This document shows positions 9,045-59,752 of a DNA stretch of 64,000 bases, in pieces. Position 1 is the stretch's first letter. Each line of letters starts with the position of its first letter. The stretch is taken from the NCBI RefSeq assembly GCF_963921235.1, contig NC_086128.1, positions 9,238,001-9,302,000 on the forward strand, written 5' to 3'. Made by a program: the position numbers and the translations under genes. The notes under the pieces were generated by a model that saw only the letters and a list, made by a program, of their open reading frames with translations, was not told the origin of the DNA and searched no databases. This DNA is from Mobula hypostoma (lineage: Eukaryota).

Positions 9045-12000
9045 TGTATGCTTTCAGTCCTTTGTATTTTCTGTCCAGTGAGAGAGGGGAGAAGAGAGAG
9101 TGTTTGGAGTGGGTGAGGTCTTTGATTATGGTGGCTGCTTTACTGAGGCAGCAAGAAGTGTAGACAGAGTCAATAGAGGGAAGGCCAGTTCCTGTGATGT
9201 GCTGAGCTGTATCCACAACTCTGCAGTTTCTTGTGAGCACATGCACAACAGTTGCTATACCAAACTGTTATGCATCCAGACGGAATGCTTTCTATGGTTC
9301 AGTAGTAACATAACATTCTTGTCTCTGAGTCAGGCCATGGAATTTCACCACAGTAACAAGCACATAACTTTGGCACCAACTGGCAGTGTTGCCATGCGGA
9401 TGATGTGGTAACAGAAGGTTTGATCTGCCTTCTCAAATAGATTTAATGAATCCATCTGATCCTATGCAATCCCATAGGATGAAAACAATCTCTGCATCCT
9501 GGCTGTTACTTAATGCTCATACGCCAACCATCAGTAATTTGATGATTACTTCATGCTGGTATGTATCCATGTGGAGATGATGCTGATGACTAAACTTCAA
9601 GAACTTTTAATTCTCTTGGGAAGTCTTGAGTATATTATACTGTTAGCCAGTAGAGAGATCTATAACTAGAAGATATAAAGATGGGAATCATTGCTATAAT
9701 CAAGGGCCAGTCTTCAACTACTTCTATTGAATAGATTTATACCTACATGCAGTCTGAAATCATAAAGTACAGCAAAGACCACTCTGTATGTGGAAGAGCA
9801 GCAGTACTGTTACATAATAGACAGCCATTTGACCCTATATTTCTGTAACAATTGGTTTCCCAATGTGCACATGTATAGTATATAGATATACACCTCTTTT
9901 ATAGCAAGCCTACAATTCTTTTCCTACATTGCTCACAACAATGACCTAGAGATTGATCAGTAACTTCTGGAGACAAGGATAACCTTGGGGAGTTGGCAAC
10001 CCTACAAGTGAAATAATCTTGCTCTTCTTCAGCATTCACTCAGAACTGAAGATGGCTTATTTGTTTTCACCATGCCTTTGTGGGTTCTGACTGGCTAATG
10101 AATCCGGTAAAGGATCTGCATACTCTTTTACAGGACGCTGAAGGGAGGCCGCTTGGTAGTTACTGGTGTTGTGTATTCCTTCTGCTCCTTACATCAGTTT
10201 TCTGCATGCTTCCAATGCATGGACTCCAGGTTCTCAATCTTTTCCCAAATGCTCTTCTACATTCATGGGCCAGAGACTCCCACCAGTTATTGGAGAAGCT
10301 GCAACTTTCTTAAGGAGGCTTTAAGCACATCCTTGAACCATTTCCTCCAGCTGCACCCCGATAATCCCTTCTCATGACAGATCTCAGAATAGCATCTATT
10401 TCAGGAGTCTGATATCAGGCATCTGAATGCAGCAGTCTGAGTGTAATTAGGGCCACAATGCTGGAACGTTGGCCTGGCAGAAGACACTGATATTGGTTTG
10501 GATGTCCCTCCTGTAAGCTTTGAGAATTTTGCAGAGGCAGCATTAGAGATATGATTCCACAATATTAGGTGTCTACTATTGGTAGTCCAGGTCCCAGCAG
10601 ACCATGAGCTTTGTGCCAGCTCTCAAATACTAAAATAGTGGACAGCAGCTGACACACAAATGTAACAAATTCTCAGCCTTTAATTTCTCATTCATGTTCT
10701 GATAAATACCTCCCAACTATTGTTGGATCACTCAGTCATAAAGTGTTCTGATCTGCTCCACTTTAGCAAAAACGGGTCAAAAATATTGGTAAAAGCAATA
10801 TAGATCTGTGGTCAGATAGCGATAGTTATCTGAGATGGGCCTTCTGTTTCTATGTATTTTGTGATTTAATGATTAGCGTTCAGACACCAGGTTATTTGTT
10901 ACTTGTGCACCTTGGATTAGGGAAGCAGTACATGCCTGCCCTCTAGAGGACTACATGAGTAAATGCACAGGAATAAATGTCACACATCAGGAAAGTGGAT
11001 GTAAGTTATATGTTGTTTCCAGCTAAAAAAAAAGCTAGATGAAGATGAAGAAGCACAGTTGGAATGTCATAGTCTCACTAATTTCACATCAGTAGAGAAA
11101 GGATACTTGGGAAATTAGTAGGAGTAATTATTTGAATAGGGAAGGATATGGTGTTATAAATTTATCAAAAGCAAATTTATTTTTATTCACTTTCCAAATC
11201 TAGGCATAGTTGGAGAGGCCAGCACTCACTAGTCAGTTGTCAAGAGAAAACACAGTGATATAGGAGATTTCCCAGTCGCAGGAATAGGCTGGATGGAACA
11301 GAGGGAACTAGAAATTCTGTCATGCAGCTCCCAAACAAGGTGCAATGTTGCACCCCTTTCTGAGATTCCGAGCATCCATTGGGAAATTTAACATCCAAAT
11401 TTGCACTGGGACTCTTTTTCCCTGCTGAAAAACTCCCAGAAATGATGTCAACAATTGCCTAATGCTCCAAATTCACCTCCAGTATATTTTTCAAGCCCAG
11501 AGGTCTGAAAAATGGCAGTTTTTATTGGCTCTCGAAATTGCCAGCTTTTAAAAATTGGCATTGTCCTGAAATAATGGGCCACCTATTTTTTTTATCTTTA
11601 ATAAGATGTGGACTACCCTGACCTCAAGTACAGCATCTACTTCTACTTACAATGACCCAGAAGGAATCTCAGGAGAGGCAGTATCATTAGTCTCACCACA
11701 CACCACCCCCCATCTCCCTGTACCCCTGCAGTTATTCTCTCTCACATGCCCAACAACAGCCCTTTCAACTTTTTTATTAAAGTTAATAAAATAATACAGT
11801 AGCCAGCTAATTCACCAGCATATAGTGTTTGGAAGTAAACCAAATCCATGTGGTCATAGAAAAAAGGTGCAAACTCCATGTAGAGTGTGCCCAAGGTCAC
11901 ATAAAGAAGCATAAGAGAGTAACACAAAGTAAGTCACCACTCTGCCACCCTCTCATGTGACTGGATTGCTTTTCCCATAGAAGTCAAGTTTAGGGTCACT

Positions 12001-14512: not shown

Positions 14513-15760
14513 TTAAAAGCAAACAAAATAATAATTGCAACATTTCATACATTTGATGAAAATAAATATTATCATCAAAATGAAGTAAGAGCTCAGGATT
14601 GTTTGCATTGCAAAGATGGACTCAGGATCAGTGAAACTTCGATGGATCCTCGGTGGGAGGCCAATCTTCAGCTTAATCCCAGCCACCATCTGGCCTTGCT
14701 TCCAACAGAAATAGGTCCCAGTATCACTCAACTGAAAGTCACGGAAAACCAGGTGATTGCCATGGTCAATGTACAACCTCATGCTATTGTTTACACCCAT
14801 CATGTACTCCTGCCTGTAGAGCTGTCGTTGTCCCTTGTCCCAGGCCACTGCTTGTTCTGCTCTGGCTCCTGGACAGGCAAGAATCAAGGGTTGAGCTATG
14901 AAATGCATGTGCACCTGCACTGGGACTTTAGGAACTTTCTTATTCTTGTCATTGGTGTAACCGAACAGGTCAAAGATGAACGTCTGTCCTTCAACGAAGT
15001 TGGGAGGTTTTGGACACTGCGTGAAGCAGCTCCGCACCATAATCTCAGCTTTTCTCTTCTTCAGGATGTGGTGGTACCTAGGGGGAACAGCAGCAGAGCC
15101 ACAGGAGACCACGTCAGGTATGGTCTTCTTGTACCTGAAATAGAGGTAATGGCTATGGAAGTAACACAAGCCAATGCGCCGTTGTTCTCCTCTCACCCCA
15201 CACCGATCACACACGGTCCAGTCCCAATACAACGTAAAAATCTTGTAGGTCTTAGTCTCCACATCCATCTGAGGCTTCTTATTCTGCTCCTGGAAGGTTA
15301 TCTGCGCATTGCTGTAACTTTGCACATCAACATCATAACCGTAGAAGTAATCGCCCTTCACAGAACCACACATATAATGCCCAGAATCTTCAGGCTGGGC
15401 ATTGAAAACTACCAGGCTAAACATTAAGATACTGAACCGTGAACTTATTGGTGATCCAAAACGTAACTGTGAAGTATCTAAAATCTTCATTCCATTGAAG
15501 TCACTCAGAACCTTTGTGTGTCCCTTGCCCAGTTTTTTCTGATAGTACCAGACAACTGAGGTCACCTCCTTAGGCTTACAGAGGCATGGCAGTTCAAAGG
15601 TCATATCAGCCAGATAAGCAGCGTTCTGGAACATTAAGAAGGCAGGGCAGGACTGGATCTTGAATATATCTTCTTCCTCTTCTATTACAAACTCACTAGC
15701 ATAAGCAGACAGTGCCCACAGAACGGGAATAAATGAAAAAATAGTATGTGGGAGCAACAT
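14513..15760 (-). CDS. FAM187A: Ig-like V-type domain-containing protein FAM187A (415 aa, single coding exon)
   Basis: Signal peptide, then SCPAFLMFQNAAYLADMTFELPCLCKP. Two Ig domains (DSGHYMC, DTGTYFC), a WDWTVCDRCGVRGEQRRIGLC linker, a C-terminal TM helix and a Cys-rich tail. A at -3 of the ATG. It lies downstream of CCDC103 on the same strand, as in mammals. Confidence 0.93.
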   Translation of the reverse strand: MLLPHTIFSFIPVLWALSAYASEFVIEEEEDIFKIQSCPAFLMFQNAAYLADMTFELPCLCKPKEVTSVVWYYQKKLGKGHTKVLSDFNGMKILDTSQLRFGSPISSRFSILMFSLVVFNAQPEDSGHYMCGSVKGDYFYGYDVDVQSYSNAQITFQEQNKKPQMDVETKTYKIFTLYWDWTVCDRCGVRGEQRRIGLCYFHSHYLYFRYKKTIPDVVSCGSAAVPPRYHHILKKRKAEIMVRSCFTQCPKPPNFVEGQTFIFDLFGYTNDKNKKVPKVPVQVHMHFIAQPLILACPGARAEQAVAWDKGQRQLYRQEYMMGVNNSMRLYIDHGNHLVFRDFQLSDTGTYFCWKQGQMVAGIKLKIGLPPRIHRSFTDPESIFAMQTILSSYFILMIIFIFIKCMKCCNYYFVCF

Positions 15761-24682: not shown

Positions 24683-27600
24683 TATGCCGGGATCCAGGAT
24701 GTCATGGACCGATTGCAGGGAATCCTCAAGAGTGAAGGTGAACATCCGGAAGTGGTGGTGCATGTCAGCACAAATGACCTGGGGAAGAAGAGGAAAGACA
24801 TTCTACAGCGTGACTTCAGAGAACTCTGAAGAAGGCTGAAAAGCAGGACTTCCAGGGTGGTTATCTCCGGTTTGCTTCCAGTTCCCCGTGCTGGAGTGGT
24901 CAAGAACAGGGAGATAATGGATCTGAATGTGTGGCTGAGGAACTGGTGCAGGAAGCAAGGATTTACTTTCTTGGACCATTGGGGTATGTTTCGGGGTAAG
25001 GATGAATTGTACAAAAGGGACGGGTTGCACCTTAATAAGCGGGGCACCAGCATTCTGGCAGGTAGGTTTGCCACTGCAACACGGGTGTGTTTAAACTAAG
25101 TTGTGGGGGGGAGGGGACGAACTGGAAACATAAGGATGGAGATAAAGGGAAAGTGAGAATAAGAAAAGTTAAGAATGACAGCAGAATCAACAGAGCAGAA
25201 AGCTCAAGACGGGATCGTACAGTATGGCCAAGTGAAATAGGAATTGATATGGGAGGTGAGGGAGTAATGAATTAAAAGTATTATATATGAATGCACGGAG
25301 CATAAGAAATAAAGTGGAAGAGCTTGAGGCTCAGTTGGAAATTGGTCAGTATGATGTTGTGGGAATCACAGAGACATGGCTTCAAGTGGACAGGGCCTAG
25401 GAAATGAATATTCAAGGATATACGTCCTATCGAAAGGACAGACTGATGGGCAGAGGGGGTGGGGTGGCTCTGTTGGTGAGGAATGATATTCAGTCCCTTG
25501 CGAGGGGGGACATAGAATCAGGAGATGTAGAGTCAGTATGGATAGAACTGAGAAATTCTAAGGGTAGAAAGACCCTAATGGGAGTTATCTACAGGCCCCC
25601 AAGCAGTAGTCTGGATGTAGGGTGTAAGTTGAATCAAGAGTTAAAATTGGCATGTAGCAAAGGTAATGCTACAGTTGTTATGGGGGACTTCAACATGCAG
25701 ATAGACTGGAGGAATCAGGTTGGTACTGGACCCCAAGAAAGGGAGTTTGTGGAGTCCCTCCGAGATGGATTCTTAGAACAGCTTGTACTGGAGCCTACCA
25801 GAGAGAACGCAATTCTAGATTTAGTGTTGTGCAATGCACCAGATTTGATCAGGGACCTCAAGGTAAAGGATCCATTAGGAGGTAGTGACCATAATATGAT
25901 AAGTTTTTATCTACAATTTGAGAGGGAGAAGGGAAACTCGGAAGTGTCAGTATTACAGTTGAACAAAGGGAACTATGGTGCTATGAGGGAGGAGCTGGCC
26001 AAAGTTCAATGGAACAATACCCTAGCAGGGATGACAGTGGAACAGCAATGGCAAGTGTTTCTGGGAATAATACGGAAGGTGCAGGATCAGTTCATTCCAA
26101 AGAGGAAGAAAGATCCTAAGGGGAGTAAGGGGAGGCCGTGGCTGACAAGGGAAGTAATGGACTGTATAAGAGTAACAGAGAAGAAGTATAACATAGCAAA
26201 GACGAGTGGGAAGCCGGAGGATTGGGAAACTTTTAAAGAGCAACAGAAGGTAACTAAAAAGGCAATACGCAGAGAAAAAATGAGATACGAAGGTAAACTA
26301 GCCAAGAATATAAAGGAGGATAGTAAAAGCTTCTTTAGGTATGTGAAAAGGAAAAAAATAGTTAAGACCAAAATTGGGCCCTTGAAGACAGAAACGGGTG
26401 TATTTATTATGGGGAACAAGGAAATGGCAGACGAGTTGTACAGGTACTTTGGATCTGTTTTCACTAGGGAAGACACAAACAATCTCCCAGATATAATAGT
26501 GGCCAAAGGACCTAGGGTAATGGATGAACTGAAGGAAATTTATATTAGGCAGGAAATGGTGTTGGATACACTGTTGGGTGTGAAGGCTGATAAGTCCCAG
26601 GGACCTGATGGTCTGCATCCCAGGGTACTTAAGAAGGTGGCTTTAGAAATCGTGGACGCATTGGTAATCATTCTCCAATGTTCTATAGATTCAGGATCAG
26701 TTCCTGTGGATTGGAGGGTGGCTAATGTTGTCCCTCTCTTCAAAAAGGGAGGAAGAGAGAAAACAGGGAATTATAGACCGGTTAGCCTGATGTCGGTGGT
26801 GGGAAAGATGCTGGAGTCAATTATAAAAGATGAAATTACGACACATCTGGATAGTAGTAACAGGATCGGTCTGAGTCAGCATGGATTTACGAAGGGGAAA
26901 TCGTGCTTGACTAAACTTCTGGAATGTTTTGAGGATGTAACTATGAAAATGGACAAGGGAGAGCCAGAGGATGTAGTGTACCTGGACTTTCAGAAAGCCT
27001 TTGATAAAGTCCCACATAGGAGATTGCTGCGCAAAATTAGGGCACGTGGTATTGGGGGCAGAGTACTGACATGGATTGAAGATTGGCTGGCTGACAGAAA
27101 ACAAAGAGTAGCGATTAATGGGTCCCTTTCAGAATGGCAGGTGGTGACCAGTGGGGTACCGCAGGGTTCAGTGCTGGGACCGCAGCTGTTTACAATATAT
27201 ATTAATGATTTAGATGAGGGAATTAAAAGTAACATTAGCAAATTTGCTGATGACACAAAGCTGGGTGGCAGTGTGAAATGTGAGGAGGATGTTATGAGAA
27301 TGCAGGGTGACTTGGACAGGCTGGGTGAGTGGGCAGATGCATGGCAGATGCAGTTTAATGTGGATAAATGTGAGGTTATCCACTTTGGTGGTAAGAACAG
27401 GAAGGCAGACTATTATCTAAATGGAGTCAAGTTAGGAAAAGGGGAAGTACAACGAGATCTAGGTGTTCTTGTACATCAGTCACTGAAAGCAAGCATGCAA
27501 GTACAGCAGGCAGTGAAGAAAGCTAATGGCATGCTGGCCTTCATAACAAGGGGAATTGAGTATAAGAGCAAAGAGGTCCTTCTGCAGCTGTACAGGGCCC

Positions 27601-28156
27601 TGGTGAGACCACACCTGGAGTACTGTGTGCAGTTTTGGTCTCCAAATTTGAGGAAGGACATTCTTGCTATTGAGGGAGTGCAGCGTAGGTTCACAAGGTT
27701 AATTCCCGGGATGGCGGGACTGTCATATGTCGAAAGACTGGAGCGAATGGGCTTGTATACTCTGGAATTTAGAAGGCTGAGAGGGGATCTTATTGAAACA
27801 TATAAGATTATTAAGGGATTGGACACGCTGGAGGCAGGAAGCATGTTCCCGCTGATGGGTGAGTCCAGAACCAGAGGCTACAGTTTAAGAATTAGGGGTA
27901 GGTCAGTTAGAACAGAGTTGAGTTCACCCAGAGAGTGGTGGATGTATGGAATGCTCTGCCCCAGAAGGCTGTGGAGGCCAAGTCTCTGGATGCTTTCAAA
28001 AAAGAGATGGATAGAGCTCTTAAAGATAGCGGAATCAAAGGTTTATGGGGATAAGGCAGGAACTGGATACTGATTGTGGATGATCAGTCATGATCACAGT
28101 GAATGGCAGTGCTGGCTCGAAGGGCCAAATGGCCTACTCCTGCACCTGTTGTCTAT
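24683..28156 (+). mobile_element. Young CR1 LINE with partial ORF1 and almost intact ORF2 (APE plus RT)
   Basis: SGNH ORF1 end (RDGLHLNKRG, 24857-25099). The 889-aa ORF at 25404-28073 has APE (VMGDFN, LDLVL, SDHN) and RT (YLDFQKAFDKVPH, GVPQGSVLGP, KFADDTK) motifs. A stop lies just upstream of 25404 and a frameshift near 27920. Confidence 0.96.
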
Positions 28157-35001: not shown

Positions 35002-35460
35002 CTAGTTAAATCTGTATGCTTTTATTAACCGTTGGAGCATTCTCCTATTTATTGCCTCCTCAGGAGCACACCCCTCTTTTACAGTTTCCTCAGGATTCAT
35101 CTCTATCTCACTTCCCTGCTGCAAAACTTCACCCAGGTTCTGCTCTAGCAGTTGAAACAGCCTTAGGCCCTTCTCCCTCTCTTTGCTGTTCAGGAAATCC
35201 ACATTCAGGCCAAACCGTCGAGTTTGAGAGAGATGCAGCAGGATCCAATAAATCGCTTTTGTGTCTTCAGGTTGGAACTGATCGCAAAGTATGACCAAGA
35301 ATTCACCAAGCAGTCCAAATCCTATTTCAGCATGGAAGACATTTCCCAAGAGCTGGGCACCTAAGGTGAGAAGGAAGGCATACTTCTCTGGTTCAGTACA
35401 ATAATATCTTCTCCAGTCACGGCTAAACTCCGCTGCTGTCCTAGGTTGGGAATCTGCATG
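35002..35460 (-). CDS. CCDC103: CCDC103/DNAAF19 last coding exon (RPAP3_C-like domain)
   Basis: Acceptor ttatag|CAT at 35461/35460. Reads HADSQPRTAAEFSRDWRRYY...GNVFHAEIGFGLLGEFL...RFGLNVDFLNSKERE...stop. 459 nt, phase 0. Confidence 0.92.
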   Translation of the reverse strand, partial: HADSQPRTAAEFSRDWRRYYCTEPEKYAFLLTLGAQLLGNVFHAEIGFGLLGEFLVILCDQFQPEDTKAIYWILLHLSQTRRFGLNVDFLNSKEREKGLRLFQLLEQNLGEVLQQGSEIEMNPEETVKEGCAPEEAINRRMLQRLIKAYRFN

Positions 35461-49620: not shown

Positions 49621-52600
49621 CATAGAAACCATAGCACAGAAACAGGCCTTTTGGCCCTCCTTGGCTGTGCCGAACCATTTTCTGCCTAGTCCCACTGACC
49701 TGCACACGGACCATATCCCTCCATATGCCTCCCATCCATGTATCTGTCCAATTTATTCTTAAATGTTAAAAAAGAACCCGCATTTACCAGCTCGTCTGGC
49801 AGCTCATTCCATACTCCCACCACTCTCTGTGTGAAGAAGCCCCCCCTAATGTTCCCTTTAAACTTTTCCCCCCTCACCCTAACCCATGTCCTCTTTTTTT
49901 TTTCCTCCCCTTGCCTCAGTGGAAAAAGCCTGCTTGCATTCACTCTATCTATACCCATCATAATTTTATATACCTCTTATCAAATCTCCCCTCATTCTTC
50001 TATGCTCCAGGGAATAAAGTCCCAACCTATTCAACCTTTCTCTGTAACCGAGTTTCTCAAGTCCCGGCAACATCCTTGTAAACCTTCTCTGCACTCTTTC
50101 AACCTTATTTATATCCTTCCTGTAATTTGGTGACCACAACTGAACACAATACTCCAGATTCGGCCTCACCAATGTCTTATACAACCTCATCATAACATTC
50201 CAGCTCTTATACTCAATACTTTGATTAATAAAGGCCAATGTACCAAAAGCTCTCTTTACGACCCTATCTGCCTGTGACGCCACTTTTAGGGAATTTTGTA
50301 TCTGTATTCCCAGATCCCTCTGTTCCACTGCACTCCTCAGTGCCTTACCATTAACCCTGTATGTTCTACCTTGGTTTGTCCTTCCAACGTGCAATACCTC
50401 ACACTTGTCAGTATTAAACTCCATCTGCCATTTTTTAGCCCATTTTTCCAGCTGGTCCAAGTCCCTCTGCAGGCTCTGAAAACCTTCCTCACTGTCTACA
50501 CCTCCAATCTTTGTATCATCAGCAAACTTGCTGATCCAATTTACCACATTATCATCCAGATCATTGATATAGATGACAAATAACAATGGACCCAGCATTG
50601 ATCCCTGTGGCACACCACTAGTCACAGGCCTCCACTCGGAGAAGCAATTCTCTACCACCACTCTCTGGCTTCTTCCATCGAGCCAATGTCTAATCCAATT
50701 TACCACCTCTCCATGTATACCTAGCGACTGAATTTTCCTAACTAACCTCCCATGCGGGACCTTGTCAAAAGCCTTACTGAAGTCCATGTAGACAATATCC
50801 ACTGCCTCCCCTTCATCCACTTTCCTGGTAACCTCCTCGAAAAACTCCAATAGATTGGTCAAACATGACCTACCACGCACAAAGCCATGTTGACTCTCCC
50901 TAATAAGTCCCAGTCTATCCAAATGCTTGTAGATTCTGTCTCTTAGTACTCCCTCCAATAACTTACCTACTACCGACGTTAAACTTACTGGCCTATAATT
51001 TCCGGGATTATTTTTCGATCCTTTTTTAAATAACGGAACAACATGAGCCACTCTCCAATCCTCCGGCACCTCACCTGTAGACAGCGACATTTTAAATATT
51101 TCAGCCAGGGCCCCTGCAATTTCAACACTAGTCTCCTTCAAGGCCCGAGGGAACACCCTGTCAGGTCCTGGGGATTTATCCACTTTAATTTTCCACAAGA
51201 CAGCAAGGACCTCCTCCTTTTCGATCTGTACAGTTTCCATGATCTCACTACTTGTTTCCCTTAATTCCATAGACTTCATGCCAGTTTCCTTAGTAAATAC
51301 AGATGCAAAAAACCTATTTAAGATCTCCCGCATTTCCTTTGGTTCCGCACATAGCCGACCACTCTGATCTTCAAGAGGACCAATTTTATCCCTTACAATC
51401 CTTTTGCTCTTAATATACCTGTAAAAGCTCTTTGGATTATTCTTCACTTTGACTGCCAAGGCAACCTCGTCTTCTTTTAGCCCTCCTGATTTCTTTCTTA
51501 AGTATTTTCTTGCACTTCTTATACTCCTCAAGCACCTTATTTACTCCCTGCTTCCTATACACGTCATACAACTCCCTCTTCTTCTTTATCAGAGTTGCAA
51601 TATTCCTTGAGAACCAAGGTTCCTTATTCCTATTCACCTTGCCTTTAATCCTGACAGGAACATACAAATTCTGCACTCTCAAAATTTCTCCTTTGAAGGC
51701 TTCCCACCTACCGATCGCATCCATGCCAGAGAACAACCTGTCCCAATCCATGCTTTTTAGATCCTTTCTCATTTCTTCAAATTTGGCCGCCTTCTAGTTA
51801 AGAACCTCAACCCTAGGACCAGATCTATCCTTGTCCATGATCAAGTTGAAACTAATGGCGTTATGATCACTGGAACCAAAGTGCTCCCCTACACAGACTT
51901 CTGTCACTTGTCCTAACTCGTTTCCTAACAGGAGATCCAATATTGCATCCCCTCTAGTTGGTCCCTGTGTATATTGATTTAGAAAACTTTCCTGAACACA
52001 TTTTACAAACTCTAAACCATCTAGACCCCTAACAGTATGGGAGACCCAATCAATATATGGAAAATTAAAATCCCCTACCACCACAACTTTATGTTTCCTG
52101 CAGTTGCCTGCTATCTCTCTGCAGATTTGCACTTCCAATTCTCTTTGACTATTGGGTGGTCTGTAATACAATCCCACTAATGTGGCCATACCTTTCCTGT
52201 TTCTCAGCTCCACCCACAAGGACTCAGTAGACAAACCCTCTATTCTGTCCTGCCTGAGCACTGCTGTAATATTTTCCCTAACAAGCAATGCCACTCCCCC
52301 ACCTTTCATTCCTCTGCCTCGATCACATCTGAAACATCGGAACCCTGGAATATTAAGCTGCCAGTCCTGCCCCTCCTGTAGCCAAGTTTCACTAATTGCT
52401 ACAACGTCATAATTCCACGTGTCAATCCACGCCCTCAACTCATCCGCCTTCCCCGCAATACTCCGAGCATTGAAATATATACACCTCAGAAGATTTTTAC
52501 CACCACTCACAACCTTTCTATTAGTGGATTTGCTTGAACTTTTAACATCATTTATTTCCACCCCAGCCACACTGTCAGCTCTGGTACTGTGGTTCCCATC

Positions 52601-53405
52601 CCCCTGCAAATCTAGTTTAAAGCCCCCCCAATAGCATTAACAAACCTCCCTGAAAGGATACTGGTCCCCCTGTAGTTCAAGTGTAACCCGTCTCTCTTGT
52701 ACAGGTCCCACCTGCCCCAGAAGAGGTCCCAATGATCCTGAAATCTGAAACCCTGCCCCCTACACCAGTTCCTCAGCCACTTGTTCATCCTCCAGAGCAT
52801 CCTATTCCTACCCTCACTGGCACGTAGCACAGGTAGCAATCCTGAGATTACCACCCTCGAGGTCCTGCTTTTCAACTTCCTACCAAGCTCTCTATACTCA
52901 CTGTCCAGGACTTCTTCACTCTTCCTTGCTATGTCATTGGTACCGATGTGCACCATGACATCTGGCTGGTCACCCTCCCACTTCAGAATGTCATGCAATC
53001 GATCAGAGACATCCTTGACCCTGGCACCTGGGAGGCAACAAACCATCCTGGATTCTCTGTCACGACCACAGAACCTCCTATCTGCACCTCTATCAAGTAC
53101 CCTATCACTACCGCTCTCCTGTTTTTCCCCCCCTCCCTTCGGCACTGCAGAGCCAGACCCAGTGGAAGAGATCCGGCTACTGCAGCTAGTCCCAGGTAAG
53201 TCATCCCCCCCAACAGTATCCAATGCAGTATACTTGTTGTTGAGGGGAATGGCCACAGGGGAACCCTGCTCTGCCTGCCCTTTCCCCTTCCCTCACCTGA
53301 CAGTGACCCAATTTCCTGTCCTCTGCTCCTTTGGCGTAACTACCTCCCTGTAGCTACGATCTATAATCTCCTCATTCTCCCGAATGATCCGCAGGTCATC
53401 CAGCA
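49621..53405 (-). mobile_element. Near full-length CR1 LINE (SGNH ORF1, APE, RT), few frameshifts
   Basis: ORF1 52612-53256 (VHIGTND, RDGLHLN), APE 51794-52609, RT 49966-51531. Nested in a degenerate Rex/Babar element (about 48340-49620 and 53406-53780). Confidence 0.95.
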
Positions 53406-54869
53406 GGTCATTCATTCAGATTTGAAACGAATCCCTGAATATTGCCCAGTCCACTCACTCAAACCAATCCTGTAAGTGCTCTCTGCCTCCCTTGGTCTTA
53501 ATCACAGTCTTTAGTTTCTGCCTGTATGCTGGGTACAGCCAAGTGATCAGACTTTCCAAAGTGTGGGCGTGGGATGACACAATGTGTTCTTGATGGTGGT
53601 ATAACAGTGGTCAACTGTGTTGGCTCCTCTGGTTCCACGAGTGGTAGTTGTTCAGAGACTTCTTCAAGCTGGCCTGGTTGAAATCCCACACTGCATCACT
53701 GCTGACCATGGTACTCAGTTCCTCCAGTACCTGCCTGACATTGACCCGAGGTGGAATATACACCACTACACAATGATGGTACAAAGCCCAGCCCAGTACA
53801 TTACATTCATTAGCCTGCATTGTCTGCAATTCTAGTCATCACATTATAGAAAGGATGTATTAGAACGGACAGAACGTAGCAGTTACTCACCAGAATGTTG
53901 CCTGGGTTGGAGAGAAATTGGATAGGTTGGGCTTGTTTTCTCAGGAGAAACTGAAGCTGAGGGGTGACCTTACAGAGGTATATTTTCAAGAGCTAAGGAA
54001 CAAGGTGACATTGGATGCAGGCCATTACTTCCTACAAAGTAAAATTCAACATCGTGAACAACAGAAAATCTGCAGATGCTGGACAACATGAATTTACATT
54101 TTTTTTGTTTCTATATTATGTATTTCATTGTACTCCTACCACAAAGTTAACAAATATCATGACATATGCCAGTGACATTAAACCAGATTCTGATATGAGA
54201 GACCTAGTAGAAGGTTAAAGTTTTTCTCCCATTGTAGGAATATCAAAACCAAGACAGCATAGGATTATGGCAAGAGGAAAGAGTTCTGAGGTAGTGTTCT
54301 CACACAAGGAGTGGTTGATAATGTGGAAAGCACTGCCAGAGGAGGAATCAGATAGATTCACTATTTTTGAGAGGCATTTTGACCAACAAATAAACCAACA
54401 ATCTTCTGGAGGAACTCAGTGTGTCCAGCAGTATCTGACAGAGGAAAGGAAATGTCGAGGTTTTGGGTCAAAACCCAGCATCAAAACTTGAAATATCAAC
54501 AACTTCGTCCATAGAAAATGAATCATATGGTAGTATATGGTGACATAGGTATTTTGATAAAAAAAAAATACTTTGAACCCTCCGGATACTGCCTGACGCG
54601 TTGAGTTCCTCCACAAGCAACACAAGAAGCCCCGTTTGGGTAGTCAACTGCTCTCCTCTTCAACCATGGGCTCACCCAGACTTGCTCGATCCAAAGCATG
54701 GACTGTCCGAACCCTACACAGATACTACCTAACCCGCTGGATTTCTCTAGAACTTTTGTGAGTTCATCCACCTGAAGCCTCGAGGACCCACCACTTAATA
54801 AACGAGGCACGTGTCTAATGCGGGTACATAGGATTAACTGAGATAGGCAAAAAGGATCAGTATGAACAT

Positions 54870-55400
54870 GGCGGGCCGAGTGTTGGTTTCTGCGCTGTAC
54901 GAGCCTAACCAAAGCCGTTCCCCAAGTACTGACCTACTCGGCCCGGTTCCGGTGTGCCGAACCCGACCCCCGCTCCCGCTCCGACCGTTGCACCCTGCTA
55001 GCTCGTTAGGTCCCGCTCCTTTCTGCCAACTGTAGCAGCCGTTGCCATGGGACCAGGCCACGCCCCCTTACTGACTCGCCTCTGTCGCAACATTGACAAT
55101 GGGCCTGCAGCCTTGTGACGGAGCGCCGGTAGCCGCCGTCACGCCGTGCCGGGCTAGGCTGGGCTACCGGAGAGGAGCGGGTTTGCATTGGGCAGGTCTC
55201 TAGGCTCGGACCGGGGGACCAAAGCTGAGGCATTTGCAGGTGGCTTGGCGGTTGACTGAAGTTGACAGCTGCCGCTGACGGCACTCAGGGAGTGGAGGGC
55301 AAGTAAGGCTGCATCTCTACGCTGTGAGCCGCCGAGCCATTCCTCTATTTATCTGTGCCGCTCGAAGCCTTTAGCGCGGCCGTGTCTCCCACTGGGACAG
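54870..55400. promoter_or_regulatory. CpG-rich, probably bidirectional promoter (CCDC103 minus; orphan gene plus)
   Basis: The only clearly CpG-dense non-repeat segment. X-box-like GTTGCCATGGGAC (55041-55053), SP/KLF box GGCCACGCCCC (55056-55066), ETS-like TTCCGG near 54947. Outward-facing donors: minus AG|GTCAGT (exon end 54934) and plus CAA|GTAAGG (exon end 55302). Confidence 0.75.
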
Positions 55401-56639
55401 GAAGCTGCCCGGCCACTTGGAATGAATAGCGAGGAACCAAGTCATTCTGCCCATCCAGCCCGTCTGGTATCTGCTTCCACACAGTGGCTCCTCATATAAT
55501 AGCCGCCTCCCCTTCCCAAGCACCTGAACACACCTCCTCCTGCCTCTGTGCTAGCTCCCACATATTAACCCCTTCGGGTGCGACAGTTCTCTCCTGAATT
55601 CCCCACTGGATTGAATTGAATCTTGCATTTAACCACTGACTAGTTTTGAATTATTCCATATGGAAACATCTAACCTCTGTTGTGAAGAATGGAAGCAGAA
55701 TACTCATCTGTTTGTTTTAATATAAAAAGCATTACCGTCTATTTCAGCTTTTGTAAATAGTTCCCGGGCTTTGGGCTCTGCAATTTTTTTTTTCACTACC
55801 TCCAACATGTATTTGTCATTTTAATCAAGGGAAAATGAAAACTGGAGTGTCTGTTTATTTATAAAAGGGAGAGCAGATCCATAAGTGTGGTCTAACAAGA
55901 ATTCTAGATCAACTGGGTATAATTTTCTGGCTTGGCATTTTAATTTTCTGGAGATACAATAATTAATTATACATTCTGTAGTTTTTGTTAACTTGTACAA
56001 GTTCCTAGAAATATAATGCACCCTGTACATTTTGTTTTCTGTTCTTGTACGCCATTTAAATTATTTCCAAGATGTAATTGGCCTTCTTATTCCTCCTGCC
56101 AAAATGGCATGCACTTATCTAAACTGAAATTGATTTTCTAGTTGGGCACCCATTTTGCAAGTTTATTTATTACAATATCTCCTATTTCCATTTTGGATTA
56201 TAAGCATTCATAGTATTTTCTTTTTTGTATTAATTTGTTGTATTTTGTCAAAGTCCTCTTTACACTACTGCCAGCACCACCACCACCACGACCACAAATT
56301 TGAAATCTTTCGCCAAGAAGTTCATCTGTATTATTTTTGCAAATGCAGTCTCAGCACTGACCCTTTTTTAACCCCTTTATACTCTTTAGCTGGTTTGCAC
56401 GCAGTTTGATGTCTGTTTTGATGTCATTTTCATTCCCTGCCTTTTGCTATTCTATATATAAATACAACATTCATTGAAGTATCCCGTGTATTCTTTGTGT
56501 ACTTAAGGTAACAGTATAGTTGACCATGCCTTTTCATATTAATCAGCATTAACTTTAATAATATTCTTGTTTTCAGGTGTTTTTTTTCTGTTGCATCCTT
56601 AATCAGTAAATATTCCAATACCTTTCCAGCCAGTAAGAT

Positions 56640-57362
56640 ATGACAATGCTCTCAAATTTATGCAAGGCCTTTCAAAATTTTTGCTGCGAAGATTGCATGG
56701 AAGATGATAGTCTTACGCAACAATCAAATCATAGATTACACCACAGAGGGAATGATAGTGAAAAAGAAGTCCGTTTCACGAACAGTTCCTTTGAGAGGAA
56801 GAATCTGCACTTGAGAAAAGAGAAAGCAAGGAAAGGGCAGACAAAAGAAACAGATAATTCAAAGGTTAAGAAGGCCACAAGACACCAAGCAGGAAAGCTG
56901 CCTCCAGCACGCCGAGGCAGACAGCACAGTAAAGAAAACCTGAATGTTAAAAAGGGCACTGCAAGCAGACAGCACAGCAAGGAGAGTGTAAATAGTAGAG
57001 GGAACAGTTCACAACGCAGGGGCCAAGGAAACCAATCACCCAGCGGAGAGAGCACTCAGAGCAAAAGATATTCTGAAGACAACAGAGCGAGTCGACGGCC
57101 CAGCGAAGAGAGTCTGAAAGTCAGAAAAAATACGGCAGCTAAGAGAGGTAAAATCAGCAGACAGCATAACAGAGAAGAGTTGCATGGCAGAAGAGGCTCA
57201 GCAGCACACAAAGGAAATAGAAGCAATCCATCTAACAACAAGAAGCTGAGGGATCAAAAAAACACAGCAGCGTCCAGAAAGAGTGCAAGCAGACAACATA
57301 GCAAAGAAAAGATAAATAGCAAGAAAATGACTTCTGGGCACACAAGGAAAGCAAGCAAATAG
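56640..57362 (+). CDS. Uncharacterised basic low-complexity protein (240 aa) with RQHSKE repeats
   Basis: Non-repeat-derived 723-nt ORF. Pyrimidine-rich acceptors upstream (ttgttttcag 56576; cctttccag 56629). AATAAA at 57739-57744 followed by a T/GT-rich tract. 60/240 residues are K/R. Confidence 0.7.
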   Translation: MTMLSNLCKAFQNFCCEDCMEDDSLTQQSNHRLHHRGNDSEKEVRFTNSSFERKNLHLRKEKARKGQTKETDNSKVKKATRHQAGKLPPARRGRQHSKENLNVKKGTASRQHSKESVNSRGNSSQRRGQGNQSPSGESTQSKRYSEDNRASRRPSEESLKVRKNTAAKRGKISRQHNREELHGRRGSAAHKGNRSNPSNNKKLRDQKNTAASRKSASRQHSKEKINSKKMTSGHTRKASK

Positions 57363-57738
57363 CACAGTATAAAGTGAAAAAGAGAAAAATGGTCATTGCA
57401 GTAGAGAGAGTCTTCGACCAGGTGGCATGGCAGAGAGAGACTTGAGAAGGAAAGATGCAGTAGCCAGGGAGAATGCAATCACCCGAGTAAACAGTGGTTG
57501 TGGGGAAAAGGGCACTACACCAAGAGGGCAGCCCCACAAAGGGAAATTAAACAAGTTTGCAAAGGGAGACTAAGCAGAAGCCTGGTTCAGAGCAATCAGA
57601 TGAGAGGAAGCAAGTGAAGTGCACAGACAGAACCACAAAGACTTAAAACAAAACTACTGGAGCATTGAATCTGCAAGGAAAACACATTTGCAGAAAGACA
57701 AAAATATAAATGACGAAATAATATCTGTGAGTTAAAAT

Positions 57739-57772
57739 AATAAATTAATAGCCATGATTTTTTGTGTGTTTT
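57739..57772 (+). terminator. Poly(A) signal and downstream U/GU-rich element of the orphan gene
   Basis: AATAAA at 57739-57744, then TTTTTTGTGTGTTTT at about 57758-57772. Confidence 0.65.
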
Positions 57773-58189
57773 CTGAAATTTTTAAATATTTTTGTTGAGA
57801 TGTTCGCTCATGGTTGTACATCTCTCCCACATTGATAATTCAATAAGTTCTGAGGAAAGCATACATTGTTTACACAAATGGCAACAGTATAGTGCTGACT
57901 AGGGAGACCAACTGGACACCTGTGCAGAACAAACCTGCAATTGATTAAAACCACTCTACAAAATTAACTGACGTTCAATCTCACGTTTATATATTTTGAT
58001 TGTGCAAACCCAGAATGAAAAGAATAACGAATGAGGTAAATTAAACAGCAGTGCTTAAACTGTAGAATTTGATTTTTAGATGTGTGAATAATCATGCCAT
58101 CACGATTAAGCAATGTATAACAGAGCTTTCATAGTAAAGTTAACTTTTCTCTGCCTTTCTGAGTATGAAAGTAGACCTGCAGCTGACAG

Positions 58190-59480
58190 AACAGGAAAAC
58201 CAAAGTCACTTACAGACATGTAAGTGCGAGTAAAAGGACAGTCTGGTGTGATATGGAATCACAAAAAAAGATGCATACACTGCAATAGAAGTACAAACTG
58301 GGGACTTTTCCCCTCTCTCTACAAAAGAAGTAGATGCTGCAATAGCCACGGTCAAAGTAAAAGTAGTTGAAATACTTGGGTGGCTAACCACTGGTCAAGA
58401 GGTGGTATTTGCTAGTACTGAGATGTCAGGATGGATAGAATGCATCCTAGGTTACTGAGGAAAGTCAGGGTGGAAATAGCAGAGCCATGGGCTATATAAA
58501 TTTCTGGCCTTTCAATGAAGAGATGGTGGCATGTGACTAGATAACAGCAAATTGTAACTTTATTCTGAAAAGGATGATAAGAATAAACTTATCAACAATA
58601 TTGGTGGTGTGGAATCTACTTCAAGTATTAAAATTAATCCTGTGGATTAATAAATGAAAGCTAGCGCATTATTTTAAAATGGCATTTAACGGATTTGAGT
58701 AAATTTTTTGGTGAGTTAAGAGAGGATCGATGAAGTGATTGTGGTTGACCTGAGTATGCTGAAACATTTGATAAGATACTATCAGCAGAATTGGAGTCCA
58801 ATAAATAACTGGGGCAGTGATAACATGGATGCAAAGTTTAAACAGGGTTGTGAATTGTTTTTCTGTAGAAAAGTGGCATGCCTCAGATTGGTGTTGGGGA
58901 CAACTGCTTTTGTACAACTGTTTTAACAGTTTGAACTTTGTCCGGTGGTTTATTTCAAAGTTAGTGGACAGGATCGTTGCGATAGTTTGTAAAATAATTT
59001 AGACAGCAGATACAGGCAAATAAAATACAGTATAATGCAAGGATGCATAACATACTGAAGATTTGGTAAAAAGAATGGTAGAGAAAATAACTTGAAAGGT
59101 ACATTTCTGAAGAGTTACTGATCACAATGATCTGTCTATGTCTGCACAGATGTTTGAAAATAGCTGCAAAGGATAAAAAGACTGTTTTATAAATACAGAC
59201 AGTGTCAAAAGTAAAGGAGTTTTGTAAACACTGATTTACTGTCTAGGAACACACAAAAAATTTTCTTCTCCCTGAGTACAAAGTATCTTTAAATGGAAAG
59301 AATAAAGAATCAGGTTTTCTCCTCAAAGGAGTGAAAATTAAATGGGAATTTCACAAAGTGTTCAAAAGTCATGAAACGTTTAAAGTGTATAAAGAGGAAG
59401 GATTGGCAGAGAACCAAAGATAACTGAAGGAAAAAATGTGCTAGGTTATTGGGAAGTAGCCAAGGAATGGGACCAATTGG
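58190..59480 (+). mobile_element. Ancient, highly degenerate CR1 RT remnant
   Basis: Residual GATAGAATGCATCCTAGGTTACTGAGGAAAGTCAGGGTGGAAATAGCAGAG (HPRLLRKV-like) and other RT traces. Confidence 0.55.
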
Positions 59481-59752
59481 ATTGTTTTCACAATATGCTC
59501 TAACAATTCCATTATTTCCTACAACTTTCTTTAAACAATAATGAAAAGCATGAGTTTGAAAAAGAACTTGAAGTCAGTGTTTTTCACTTCCTTGGGACCT
59601 TCCTAAGTGCTTCATGGCCAATCATAGAAAATTTATGACACAGAGGCCACTTGTCCTAGTGCCAGTTGAAAACAAGCTCACTGGGCTAAAGCAACGCACA
59701 TCAAAGTTGCTGGTGAACGCAGCAGGCCAGGCAGCATCTCTAGGAAGAGGTA

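What the first reader, a model, noticed from the sequence alone, without database searches (positions are those of the whole stretch)
55100..57772. Orphan basic-repeat gene head-to-head with CCDC103, at the position held by EFTUD2 in mammals
Seen: a complete two-exon gene structure on the plus strand. It has a CpG-island exon ending CAA|GTAAGG (55302), acceptors at 56576/56629, a 240-aa ORF, and AATAAA plus a GU-rich tract. The protein is 25% K+R. All four Cys lie in the first 19 residues (LCKAFQNFCCEDC). It carries repeated RQHSKE/RQHNRE/RRPSEE units and many R-x-x-S and RRxS kinase-type sites, and I recognise no domain. Known: in human the gene divergent from CCDC103 is EFTUD2, whose first exon is non-coding. 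I see no EFTUD2 coding exon (MDTDLYDEFGNYIG) in this window. Inference: this is either a lineage-specific gene co-regulated with a motile-cilia factor (possibly a palmitoylated or nucleic-acid-binding sperm/cilia phosphoprotein), or an alternative terminal exon that borrows the first exon of EFTUD2.
Basis: partly seen in the sequence, partly recalled or inferred. Interest (0 to 1): 0.8.

Follow-up and report, generated by a model that had tools for sequence, protein, structure and literature searches.

The report
Unannotated basic-repeat gene beside CCDC103
A real, spliced two-exon gene in a ray genome shares its promoter with the cilia gene CCDC103 and encodes a very basic, unstructured repeat protein whose reading frame has stayed open in three cartilaginous fishes although its sequence changes almost as fast as non-coding DNA, and it has no known relatives.

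Summary
RNA-type contigs from two related ray species join 55005-55302 to 56577-57748 across a GT..AG intron. The 240-aa ORF (56640-57362) sits wholly in exon 2.

The ORF has no Pfam, NCBIfam, PDB or protein-database relative, and both structure models show no fold.

The same locus upstream of CCDC103 in the sawfish Pristis pectinata holds an intact 264-aa ortholog (72% aa identity). All four indels there are multiples of three. A profile search of 1.84 billion proteins found one cluster: 204-aa ORFs on spliced transcripts of a third elasmobranch.

- **For coding:** the frame stays open for about 200 codons where neutral simulation predicts 2-7 stops, depending on the comparison and substitution spectrum. 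The start codon and the N-terminal CKAFxNFCCxDCME motif are conserved.
- **Against strong constraint:** dN/dS is 0.56-0.77, ORF nucleotide identity equals that of flanking non-coding DNA, and the C-terminus is unstable.

Most likely this is an elasmobranch-restricted gene, missing from the public protein sets I searched. Its product is a disordered, pI-11 protein with a Cys-cluster head and about seven 22-residue Ser/Lys/Arg repeats.

I found no support for the EFTUD2 alternative-exon idea. Palmitoylation, phosphorylation and a cilia or sperm role remain inference.

The parts
54900..55450 (.). CpG-island bidirectional promoter shared with CCDC103
   Evidence: GC 62.6%, CpG o/e 0.78, against 0.29-0.33 in the flanks. 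Contigs of both genes abut or overlap here.
54934..55025 (-). CCDC103 (DNAAF19) non-coding first exon, spliced on towards about 54030
   Evidence: The X2 contig covers 54934-55025. X1 and X6 contigs end at 54933 with loose ends that match 54001-54030. The CCDC103 coding exons lie at 46612-46463, 37651-37478 and 35460-35005.
55041..55054 (+). RFX-type X-box-like motif GTTGCCATGGGACC
   Evidence: It is the only GTTGCCATGG in the window. The same 14-mer is present in the Pristis promoter, and GTTGCCGTGACAAC in the Callorhinchus promoter. Binding was not tested.
55005..55302 (+). Exon 1 (non-coding); the 5' limit is uncertain
   Evidence: X1 contig positions 1-298. The X2 contig starts at 55176. 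The donor is CAA|GTAAGG at 55302. Upstream ATGs occur only at 55047 and 55099.
55303..56576 (+). Intron (GT..AG, 1274 nt)
   Evidence: Joint 55302->56577 in X1 and X2. 81% identical to Pristis with 25 indels, most of them not multiples of 3.
56577..57748 (+). Exon 2 (terminal): 63-nt leader, ORF and 3' UTR
   Evidence: X1 contig positions 299-1470. X2, X5 and X6 contigs also lie on it. The whole stretch is held by small RNA-sized runs from several samples of two species.
56640..57362 (+). ORF, 240 aa, pI 11.0, net charge +37
   Evidence: Orthologous ORFs exist in Pristis (264 aa) and a third elasmobranch (204 aa).
56640..56708 (+). Conserved N-terminal Cys-cluster motif (M.ML..CKAFxNFCCxDCMExD)
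   Evidence: C8, C15, C16, C19 and K9, A10, F11, N13, F14, D18, M20, E21 are invariant in three species.
56916..57359 (+). Tandem ~22-residue basic Ser-rich repeats (consensus SRQHSKExLxxRKxSAxxxGKA)
   Evidence: The repeat units are clearest in Pristis, as seven units of 20-24 aa. Self-similarity z-scores are 4.7 (ray), 10.1 (Pristis) and 7.2 (third species) against shuffles.
57739..57744 (+). AATAAA poly(A) signal, followed by a T/G-rich tract at 57759-57776
   Evidence: Sequence. Contigs end at 57737-57748.

Best explanation
This is a genuine two-exon, protein-coding gene restricted to elasmobranchs (and possibly all cartilaginous fishes). It is transcribed divergently from the CpG-island promoter of CCDC103/DNAAF19.

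Shown:
- The transcript is spliced at 55302|56577 and ends at a poly(A) signal.
- It is present in RNA-sized runs of two ray species and in transcript assemblies of a third elasmobranch.
- Its ORF start, frame and N-terminal Cys motif are kept in three lineages.

The product is about 27 kDa, has pI 11 and shows no predicted fold. It consists of a 25-residue acidic and hydrophobic head with four invariant Cys, followed by a tail of about seven 22-residue Ser/Lys/Arg repeats. Each repeat carries R-x-x-S and RKxS/T sites.

Selection keeps the frame open and preserves the composition and motifs, but hardly constrains the individual residues.

Inferred, not shown:
- The Cys cluster anchors the protein, most plausibly by S-palmitoylation to a membrane.
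- The polybasic repeats bind a polyanion (acidic lipid, tubulin tails or nucleic acid), and multi-site basophilic-kinase phosphorylation reverses that binding.
- The gene is co-expressed with CCDC103 through the shared X-box-bearing promoter.
For: Transcript:
- The GT..AG joint 55302->56577 is seen in two runs with 0 mismatches, with no depth in the intron or downstream of 57780.
- Exon 2 is held by 86-241-Mb runs from nine samples of two species.

Pristis ortholog:
- It is an intact 264-aa ORF at the same place and in the same orientation (tblastn E 4e-102).
- All 4 ORF indels are multiples of 3, against 1 of 8 in the 3' UTR.
- Neutral simulation gives P(no stop) of 0.011-0.14.

Third species:
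- It was the only hit in 1.84e9 proteins, E 3.5e-37.
- Its transcripts use the same exon junction.
- The frame is kept for about 200 codons at 72% nt identity, with P(no stop) of 0.0005-0.0035.

Other evidence:
- The other two frames carry 8-22 stops in every species.
- dN/dS is 0.56-0.77.
- The internal repeats are significant.
- No fold is predicted: Atlas pLDDT 0.40, AlphaFold2 pLDDT 47.9.
Against: - ORF nucleotide identity equals that of the 3' UTR, intron and downstream DNA.
- Substitutions are spread evenly over the three codon positions (31/37/36 and 59/66/59).
- Against the sister ray species there are 8 nonsynonymous changes and 1 synonymous change.
- The C-terminus is unstable. The ray stops 5 codons before Pristis. 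A 1-nt frameshift in the third species puts the last repeat out of frame.
- The ORF is absent from the NCBI-derived protein sets searched, although neighbouring genes of the same genomes are present.
- There is no peptide or ribosome evidence.
- Upstream ORFs are present in Pristis and the third species.
- Every functional step is inference from sequence features.
Confidence: 0.72

Rival explanations
1. It is a divergent promoter-associated long non-coding RNA. The ORF is not translated into a functional protein, and its persistence comes from purine-rich composition, slow chondrichthyan evolution and chance.
For: - Substitution is nearly neutral: ORF nt identity equals that of the flanks.
- The codon-position profile is flat and dN/dS is 0.56-0.77.
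- Nonsynonymous to synonymous changes are 8:1 against the sister species.
- The third species has a C-terminal frameshift.
- The ORF is not called as a CDS in the annotated genomes represented in the protein collection.
- T is only 13.8%.
Against: - Composition-matched neutral simulations predict 2-7 in-frame stops, and none is seen, in two independent comparisons.
- ORF indels keep the frame while UTR and intron indels do not.
- The other two frames are full of stops.
- The ATG, its context and the 14-residue Cys motif are conserved in three lineages.
Confidence: 0.17
2. It is an alternative terminal exon of EFTUD2. Exon 1 (55005-55302) would be the non-coding first exon of EFTUD2 and 56577-57748 a short alternative 3' end.
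For: In human, EFTUD2 is the gene head-to-head with CCDC103 (from my knowledge of the human gene map, not tested here). I never located EFTUD2 in this genome, so shared use of exon 1 cannot be excluded.
Against: - The X1 contig passes from exon 1 into exon 2 without a branch. A highly expressed gene using the same donor would be expected to break it.
- No contig lies on 57780-59500.
- No EFTUD2 motif occurs in the window or in the Pristis and Callorhinchus flanks.
- No second gene is called within 10 kb upstream of CCDC103 in Hemitrygon, Pristis, Heterodontus, Hemiscyllium, Cetorhinus or Callorhinchus.
- In bowfin the upstream neighbours are actinoporin-like genes, so the mammalian arrangement is not universal.
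- Even if exon 1 were shared, the conserved ORF would still need explaining.
Confidence: 0.05
3. It is a transposon-derived or pseudogene fragment that happens to be transcribed.
For: The window is dense with LINE, Penelope and SINE copies.
Against: - The stretch has no other copy in the window.
- It has no Pfam hit.
- It sits at the same syntenic place in Pristis.
- It has only one homologous cluster in 1.84e9 proteins.
Confidence: 0.02

Closest known systems
GAP-43/neuromodulin and other acylated, natively unfolded kinase substrates (BASP1, MARCKS); recalled from memory, a functional analogy only
   Same: A short N-terminal hydrophobic and Cys segment heads an otherwise hydrophilic, unstructured chain that carries clustered basophilic-kinase serines.
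   Different: - There is no sequence similarity and no Pfam hit.
- The protein is strongly basic (pI 11), whereas GAP-43 is acidic.
- There is no IQ motif.
- Residue 2 is not Gly, so N-myristoylation is ruled out.
- It has a tandem 22-residue repeat architecture.
Divergent lncRNAs from bidirectional CpG-island promoters
   Same: It lies head-to-head with a protein-coding gene, its 5' end overlaps that gene's 5' end, it has two exons, and its primary sequence is weakly conserved.
   Different: It carries a roughly 200-codon ORF that is kept open with in-frame indels across three lineages.
EFTUD2 first exon (the mammalian neighbour of CCDC103)
   Same: Same position and orientation relative to CCDC103, and a non-coding first exon in a CpG island.
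   Different: It splices to a terminal exon with its own ORF. No EFTUD2 coding sequence was found nearby.
Microtubule-associated-protein-type basic tandem repeats (tau/MAP2/MAP4) and elasmobranch sperm basic proteins; recalled from memory
   Same: Tandem short basic repeats with regularly spaced phosphorylatable Ser in a disordered protein; basic and Cys-bearing.
   Different: - There is no homology.
- Arg is only 12-17%, far below protamine-like proteins.
- The repeat length and motif are unlike MAP repeats.

Membership tests
Conserved protein-coding gene (general criteria) | ORF intact in orthologous loci of other species | tested here: met
   Pristis has a 264-aa ORF. The third elasmobranch has a 204-aa ORF on four transcript contigs.
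Conserved protein-coding gene (general criteria) | Indels preserve the frame, unlike those in the flanking non-coding DNA | tested here: met
   Ray against Pristis: 4 of 4 ORF indels are multiples of 3, against 1 of 8 in the 3' UTR. One exception is the 1-nt shift before the last repeat in the third species.
Conserved protein-coding gene (general criteria) | Purifying selection on amino-acid changes (dN/dS clearly below 1, excess of third-position changes) | tested here: inconclusive
   NG86 dN/dS is 0.56, 0.75 and 0.77. Codon-position differences are flat. Against the sister species there are 8 nonsynonymous changes and 1 synonymous change.
Conserved protein-coding gene (general criteria) | Evidence of translation (peptides, ribosome footprints) | not testable with these tools
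   No proteomic or Ribo-seq resource was available.
EFTUD2 transcript (alternative terminal exon) | Exon 1 also splices to EFTUD2 coding exons, and EFTUD2 exons lie downstream | tested here: not met
   The contig through 55302|56577 is unbranched, and 57780-59500 is silent. No EFTUD2 motif was found in the window, L001 or L002.
GAP-43 / MARCKS / BASP1 acylated kinase substrates | Sequence membership (Pfam neuromodulin or MARCKS models), IQ motif or Gly2 myristoylation signal | tested here: not met
   No Pfam family at E<=10. No IQ motif. Residue 2 is Thr or Leu.
GAP-43 / MARCKS / BASP1 acylated kinase substrates | S-acylation of the N-terminal cysteines | not testable with these tools
   Only the conserved Cys cluster is seen.
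Protamine-like sperm nuclear basic proteins | Very high Arg content and small size | tested here: not met
   Arg is 12-17% and Lys 10-14%, at 204-264 aa.
Non-coding divergent promoter transcript | No ORF conserved beyond chance | tested here: not met
   P(no stop) is 0.011-0.14 for Pristis and 0.0005-0.0035 for the third species, and indels are in frame.

The most novel reading that the evidence does not exclude
This is an ancient cartilaginous-fish-specific protein family that genome annotation has missed. It would be a Cys-anchored (palmitoylated), multiply phosphorylated polybasic repeat protein of motile-ciliated or sperm cells, driven with CCDC103 from one RFX X-box promoter. Its sequence would have turned over so completely that in the chimaera only position, orientation, composition and RRxS periodicity remain (Callorhinchus ORF L002 8185-8943, minus strand).
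Probability: 0.2. Interest if true: 0.55.

Novelty: new variant of a known kind. Interest (0 to 1): 0.42.

Why it matters
- **Annotation gap.** A transcribed gene with a conserved frame is missing from the public protein sets of several annotated elasmobranch genomes. It shows how disordered, fast-evolving, single-coding-exon genes escape annotation.
- **Test case for evolution.** The reading frame, composition and short motifs are under selection while residues drift at close to the neutral rate.
- **Candidate cilia or sperm factor.** Its promoter sharing with a dynein-arm factor gives a concrete, testable candidate for a lineage-specific cilia or sperm component.
- **Synteny.** The mammalian CCDC103-EFTUD2 head-to-head arrangement was not found in the chondrichthyan loci examined or in bowfin.

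Tried and rejected
Searches that found nothing for the ORF or its orthologs:
- Pfam and NCBIfam scans: nothing.
- PDB profile search: nothing.
- Word-indexed search of 5.8e9 proteins: nothing.
- ESM Atlas: no feature hit. The structure hits have TM<=0.37 and are meaningless for a pLDDT-0.40 model.
- AlphaFold2 with three sequences: pLDDT 47.9, one weak helix at 156-175.
- Tandem Repeats Finder: no DNA-level repeat in the ORF. The repeats show only at protein level.

Loci I could not obtain:
- Hemitrygon, Heterodontus, Hemiscyllium and Cetorhinus gave no DNA because the files were too large.
- Narcine, Stegostoma and Heptranchias isoforms were not on record.
- No shark genome could therefore be compared.

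Weak or negative comparisons:
- The Callorhinchus ORF gave only weak similarity: BLASTP E 0.16, Smith-Waterman z 2-3 against shuffles, and no hit from the third species. I do not claim homology.
- Bowfin has no analogue.

Leads that went nowhere:
- The species behind SRR13269345, SRR13269350, SRR17051963 and SRR11241653 could not be identified from the paper library.
- Earlier scan notes hold nothing on EFTUD2.
- The second acceptor at 56629/56630 is seen in no contig.
Full report
**1. The observation**

The window is from a batoid (ray). Its single-exon FAM187A ORF (14513-15760, minus) clusters at 90% identity or more with Hypanus, Mobula and Hemitrygon. CCDC103/DNAAF19 lies on the minus strand, with its last exon at 35460-35005.

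The 240-aa ORF at 56640-57362 (+) is present. Its properties:
- K+R is 25%.
- It has four Cys, all within residues 8-19.
- pI is 11.0, net charge +37 and GRAVY -1.73.

The stretch is T-poor (13.8% T), which lowers the stop frequency. Even so, the other two + frames carry 8 and 21 stops where the ORF frame has none. The stretch is single-copy in a window otherwise full of LINE, Penelope and SINE copies. The promoter region 54900-55450 is a CpG island (GC 62.6%, o/e 0.78).

**2. Transcription and splicing**

Eight small runs (86-241 Mb) from two studies hold about half of 55100-57800, which is the share the two exons make up.

Laying four of these runs gave the following:
- In organism A, a 1470-nt contig with no mismatch covers 55005-55302 joined to 56577-57748. 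A second run shows the same joint (skips 1274, GT..AG).
- No depth falls on the intron apart from one stray 201-nt contig.
- No depth falls on 57780-59500.
- Contigs end at 57737-57748, at the AATAAA (57739-57744).
- The acceptor at 56629/56630 is never used.
- In the same runs, contigs of CCDC103 exon 1 (54934-55025) overlap the 5' end of this transcript. The two genes therefore share one bidirectional promoter and are expressed in the same samples.

Exon 2 alone is held by RNA-sized runs from five samples of organism A and four of organism B. Small shares appear in two further organisms. The runs are not on record as RNA. The spliced contigs and their small size are what indicate RNA.

**3. 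Known families**

- No Pfam or NCBIfam family matches.
- No PDB relative was found.
- Nothing was found among 5.8e9 clustered proteins.
- The exact ray and Pristis sequences are not in the 15-billion collection, although FAM187A and CCDC103 of these genomes are.
- The ESM Atlas holds the exact 240-aa sequence with pLDDT 0.40 and pTM 0.10.
- AlphaFold2 on a three-species alignment gives pLDDT 47.9 and pTM 0.15.

No fold is predicted.

**4. Orthologs**

I used CCDC103 as an anchor and fetched the Pristis pectinata locus (L001). Divergent from CCDC103 there lies an intact 264-aa ORF (L001 1191-1985, minus). It aligns end to end with the ray protein (tblastn E 4e-102; 72% aa identity). The donor, the acceptor and the ATG context are conserved.

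A profile of the two proteins, searched against 1.84e9 representatives, found exactly one cluster (E 3.5e-37). It holds nine Logan-derived proteins of 188-204 aa on 0.9-2.3-kb contigs from at least four runs.
- Those contigs carry the homologous exon 1 | exon 2 junction (L005, L006), an unspliced form (L004) or another first exon (L003).
- All four fetched contigs hold the same 204-aa ORF starting MLMLCKAFRNFCCGDCME. The 188-aa entries reflect the gene caller's choice of start.
- I could not identify this third species.

**5. Is the ORF under selection?**

Evidence for selection:
- *Ray against Pristis.* All four ORF indels are multiples of 3 (24, 9, 18, 6). In the 3' UTR only 1 of 8 is, and in the intron about 4 of 25.
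- *Ray to Pristis, neutral simulation.* I placed the observed 102 substitutions on the ray ORF, using spectra taken from the flanking non-coding alignment. This yields 1.9-4.4 stops on average, with P(no stop) of 0.011-0.14.
- *Third species.* The frame is kept for about 200 codons at 72-74% nt identity through several in-frame indels. The same simulation yields 5.3-6.6 stops and P(no stop) of 0.0005-0.0035.
- The other frames hold 8-22 stops in every species.
- The N-terminal motif is invariant at C8, K9, A10, F11, N13, F14, C15, C16, D18, C19, M20 and E21.

Evidence against strong constraint:
- ORF nt identity (0.86 to Pristis, 0.72-0.74 to the third species) equals that of the 3' UTR (0.87; 0.71-0.76). 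It is close to the intron and downstream DNA (0.80-0.81; 0.71-0.75).
- dN/dS is 0.56, 0.75 and 0.77, with a flat codon-position profile.
- Against organism B, which differs from the ray at about 1.2% of ORF sites, there are 8 nonsynonymous changes and 1 synonymous change.
- The C-terminus is labile. The ray stops five codons before Pristis. In the third species a 1-nt shift puts the last repeat (TVTARKNTSRQFRKENINAKKMTAG...SVK*) in another frame.

My reading is that selection keeps an open frame, a start codon, a head motif and a basic Ser-rich repeat composition, but tolerates most residue changes. That pattern is typical of fast-evolving disordered proteins. I put protein-coding at about 0.8-0.85.

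**6. Architecture**

In Pristis the tail resolves into seven units of 20-24 residues, mostly 22, with consensus SRQHSKExLxxRKxSAxxxGKA. Self-similarity is significant in all three species (z 4.7-10.1). Each protein has 8-13 R-x-x-S/T sites. The head (residues 1-25) is hydrophobic and acidic with four Cys.

**7. Mechanism (inference)**

A conserved N-terminal Cys cluster flanked by Leu and Phe, on an otherwise very hydrophilic chain without Gly2 or a transmembrane segment, is the kind of context in which S-palmitoylated peripheral membrane proteins occur (from general knowledge). The polybasic, regularly serine-studded repeats would bind acidic surfaces and be released by basophilic-kinase phosphorylation.

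The shared promoter carries an RFX-type X-box-like motif, GTTGCCATGGGACC, at 55041. The same 14-mer is present in Pristis, and a closer match to the consensus (GTTGCCGTGACAAC) sits in the Callorhinchus promoter. This fits CCDC103's role in motile cilia and suggests co-regulation. None of this was tested.

**8. Depth and synteny**

In Callorhinchus a 191-aa ORF (252 aa stop-to-stop) lies in the same place and orientation. It is K/R/S-rich, has seven RRxS/T sites and carries a C-x-D-C element. Its similarity to the ray, Pristis and third-species proteins is only marginal. It is a lead, not a homolog.

Bowfin has actinoporin-like genes upstream of CCDC103 and no analogue.

No EFTUD2 motif or called gene was found next to CCDC103 in any chondrichthyan locus examined. 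The EFTUD2 alternative-exon reading is therefore unsupported, though I never located EFTUD2 itself.

**9. Verdict**

This is a real gene. It is probably protein-coding, belongs to no known family and is restricted to cartilaginous fishes as far as can be seen. Its function is unknown, and the best guess is a Cys-anchored polybasic phosphoprotein. Interest is moderate.

Noticed in passing
window 55041-55054; L001 3738-3751 (-); L002 9935-9948: An RFX-type X-box-like motif sits in the shared CCDC103 promoter. The 14-mer is identical in ray and sawfish, and the chimaera has a closer match to the consensus. Pristis has a second one (GTTGCCTTGACAAT) 46 nt away.
   Followed up: partly
L002 8185-8943 (-), with 9863-9868: Callorhinchus has a K/R/S-rich ORF with seven RRxS/T sites, divergent from CCDC103. 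An ACCATGG|GTAAGG in the promoter-proximal exon would read in frame into it through the acceptor ...atacag|GG. Degenerate copies of the repeat continue past the stop codon.
   Followed up: partly
L001 3700-8480: In Pristis a 4.7-kb GGA/GGG-rich simple repeat lies between the shared promoter and the first CCDC103 coding exon. It is open in all six frames, with ORFs up to 1591 aa.
   Followed up: no
window 35005-35460 (-): The window's own CCDC103 protein did not appear among the hits (the best was Hemitrygon at 84%), although its FAM187A is in the collection. CCDC103 may be unannotated or modelled differently in this genome.
   Followed up: no
window 54474-54647: A short element here drew very high summed depth and dozens of contigs with loose ends at 54513 and 54547 in all four runs. 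It is probably a dispersed, transcribed repeat (SINE-like) just upstream of the promoter.
   Followed up: no
window 25404-28073 (+); 49966-53256 (-): An 889-aa apparently intact LINE endonuclease/reverse-transcriptase ORF. A second, nearly complete LINE (ORFs of 214, 271, 111 and 521 aa) lies inside a CCDC103 intron.
   Followed up: no
L003 1-245: One transcript of the third species has a different, GC-rich first exon with an internal duplication (GGCGGTTGGCGTTGCT twice), joined at or within 1 nt of the same exon 2 acceptor. This suggests an alternative promoter or first exon.
   Followed up: no
L007 575-6800 and 13784-21519: In bowfin, CCDC103 is preceded by two actinoporin-like (Anemone_cytotox) genes and FAM187A is followed by ACE. 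The neighbourhood therefore differs from the mammalian one.
   Followed up: no
L001 about 2040 (-); L005 31-96: Pristis and the third species have a short upstream ORF that starts at the first bases of exon 2 (7 and 21 codons; the latter overlaps the main ATG). The ray has GTG there instead.
   Followed up: partly
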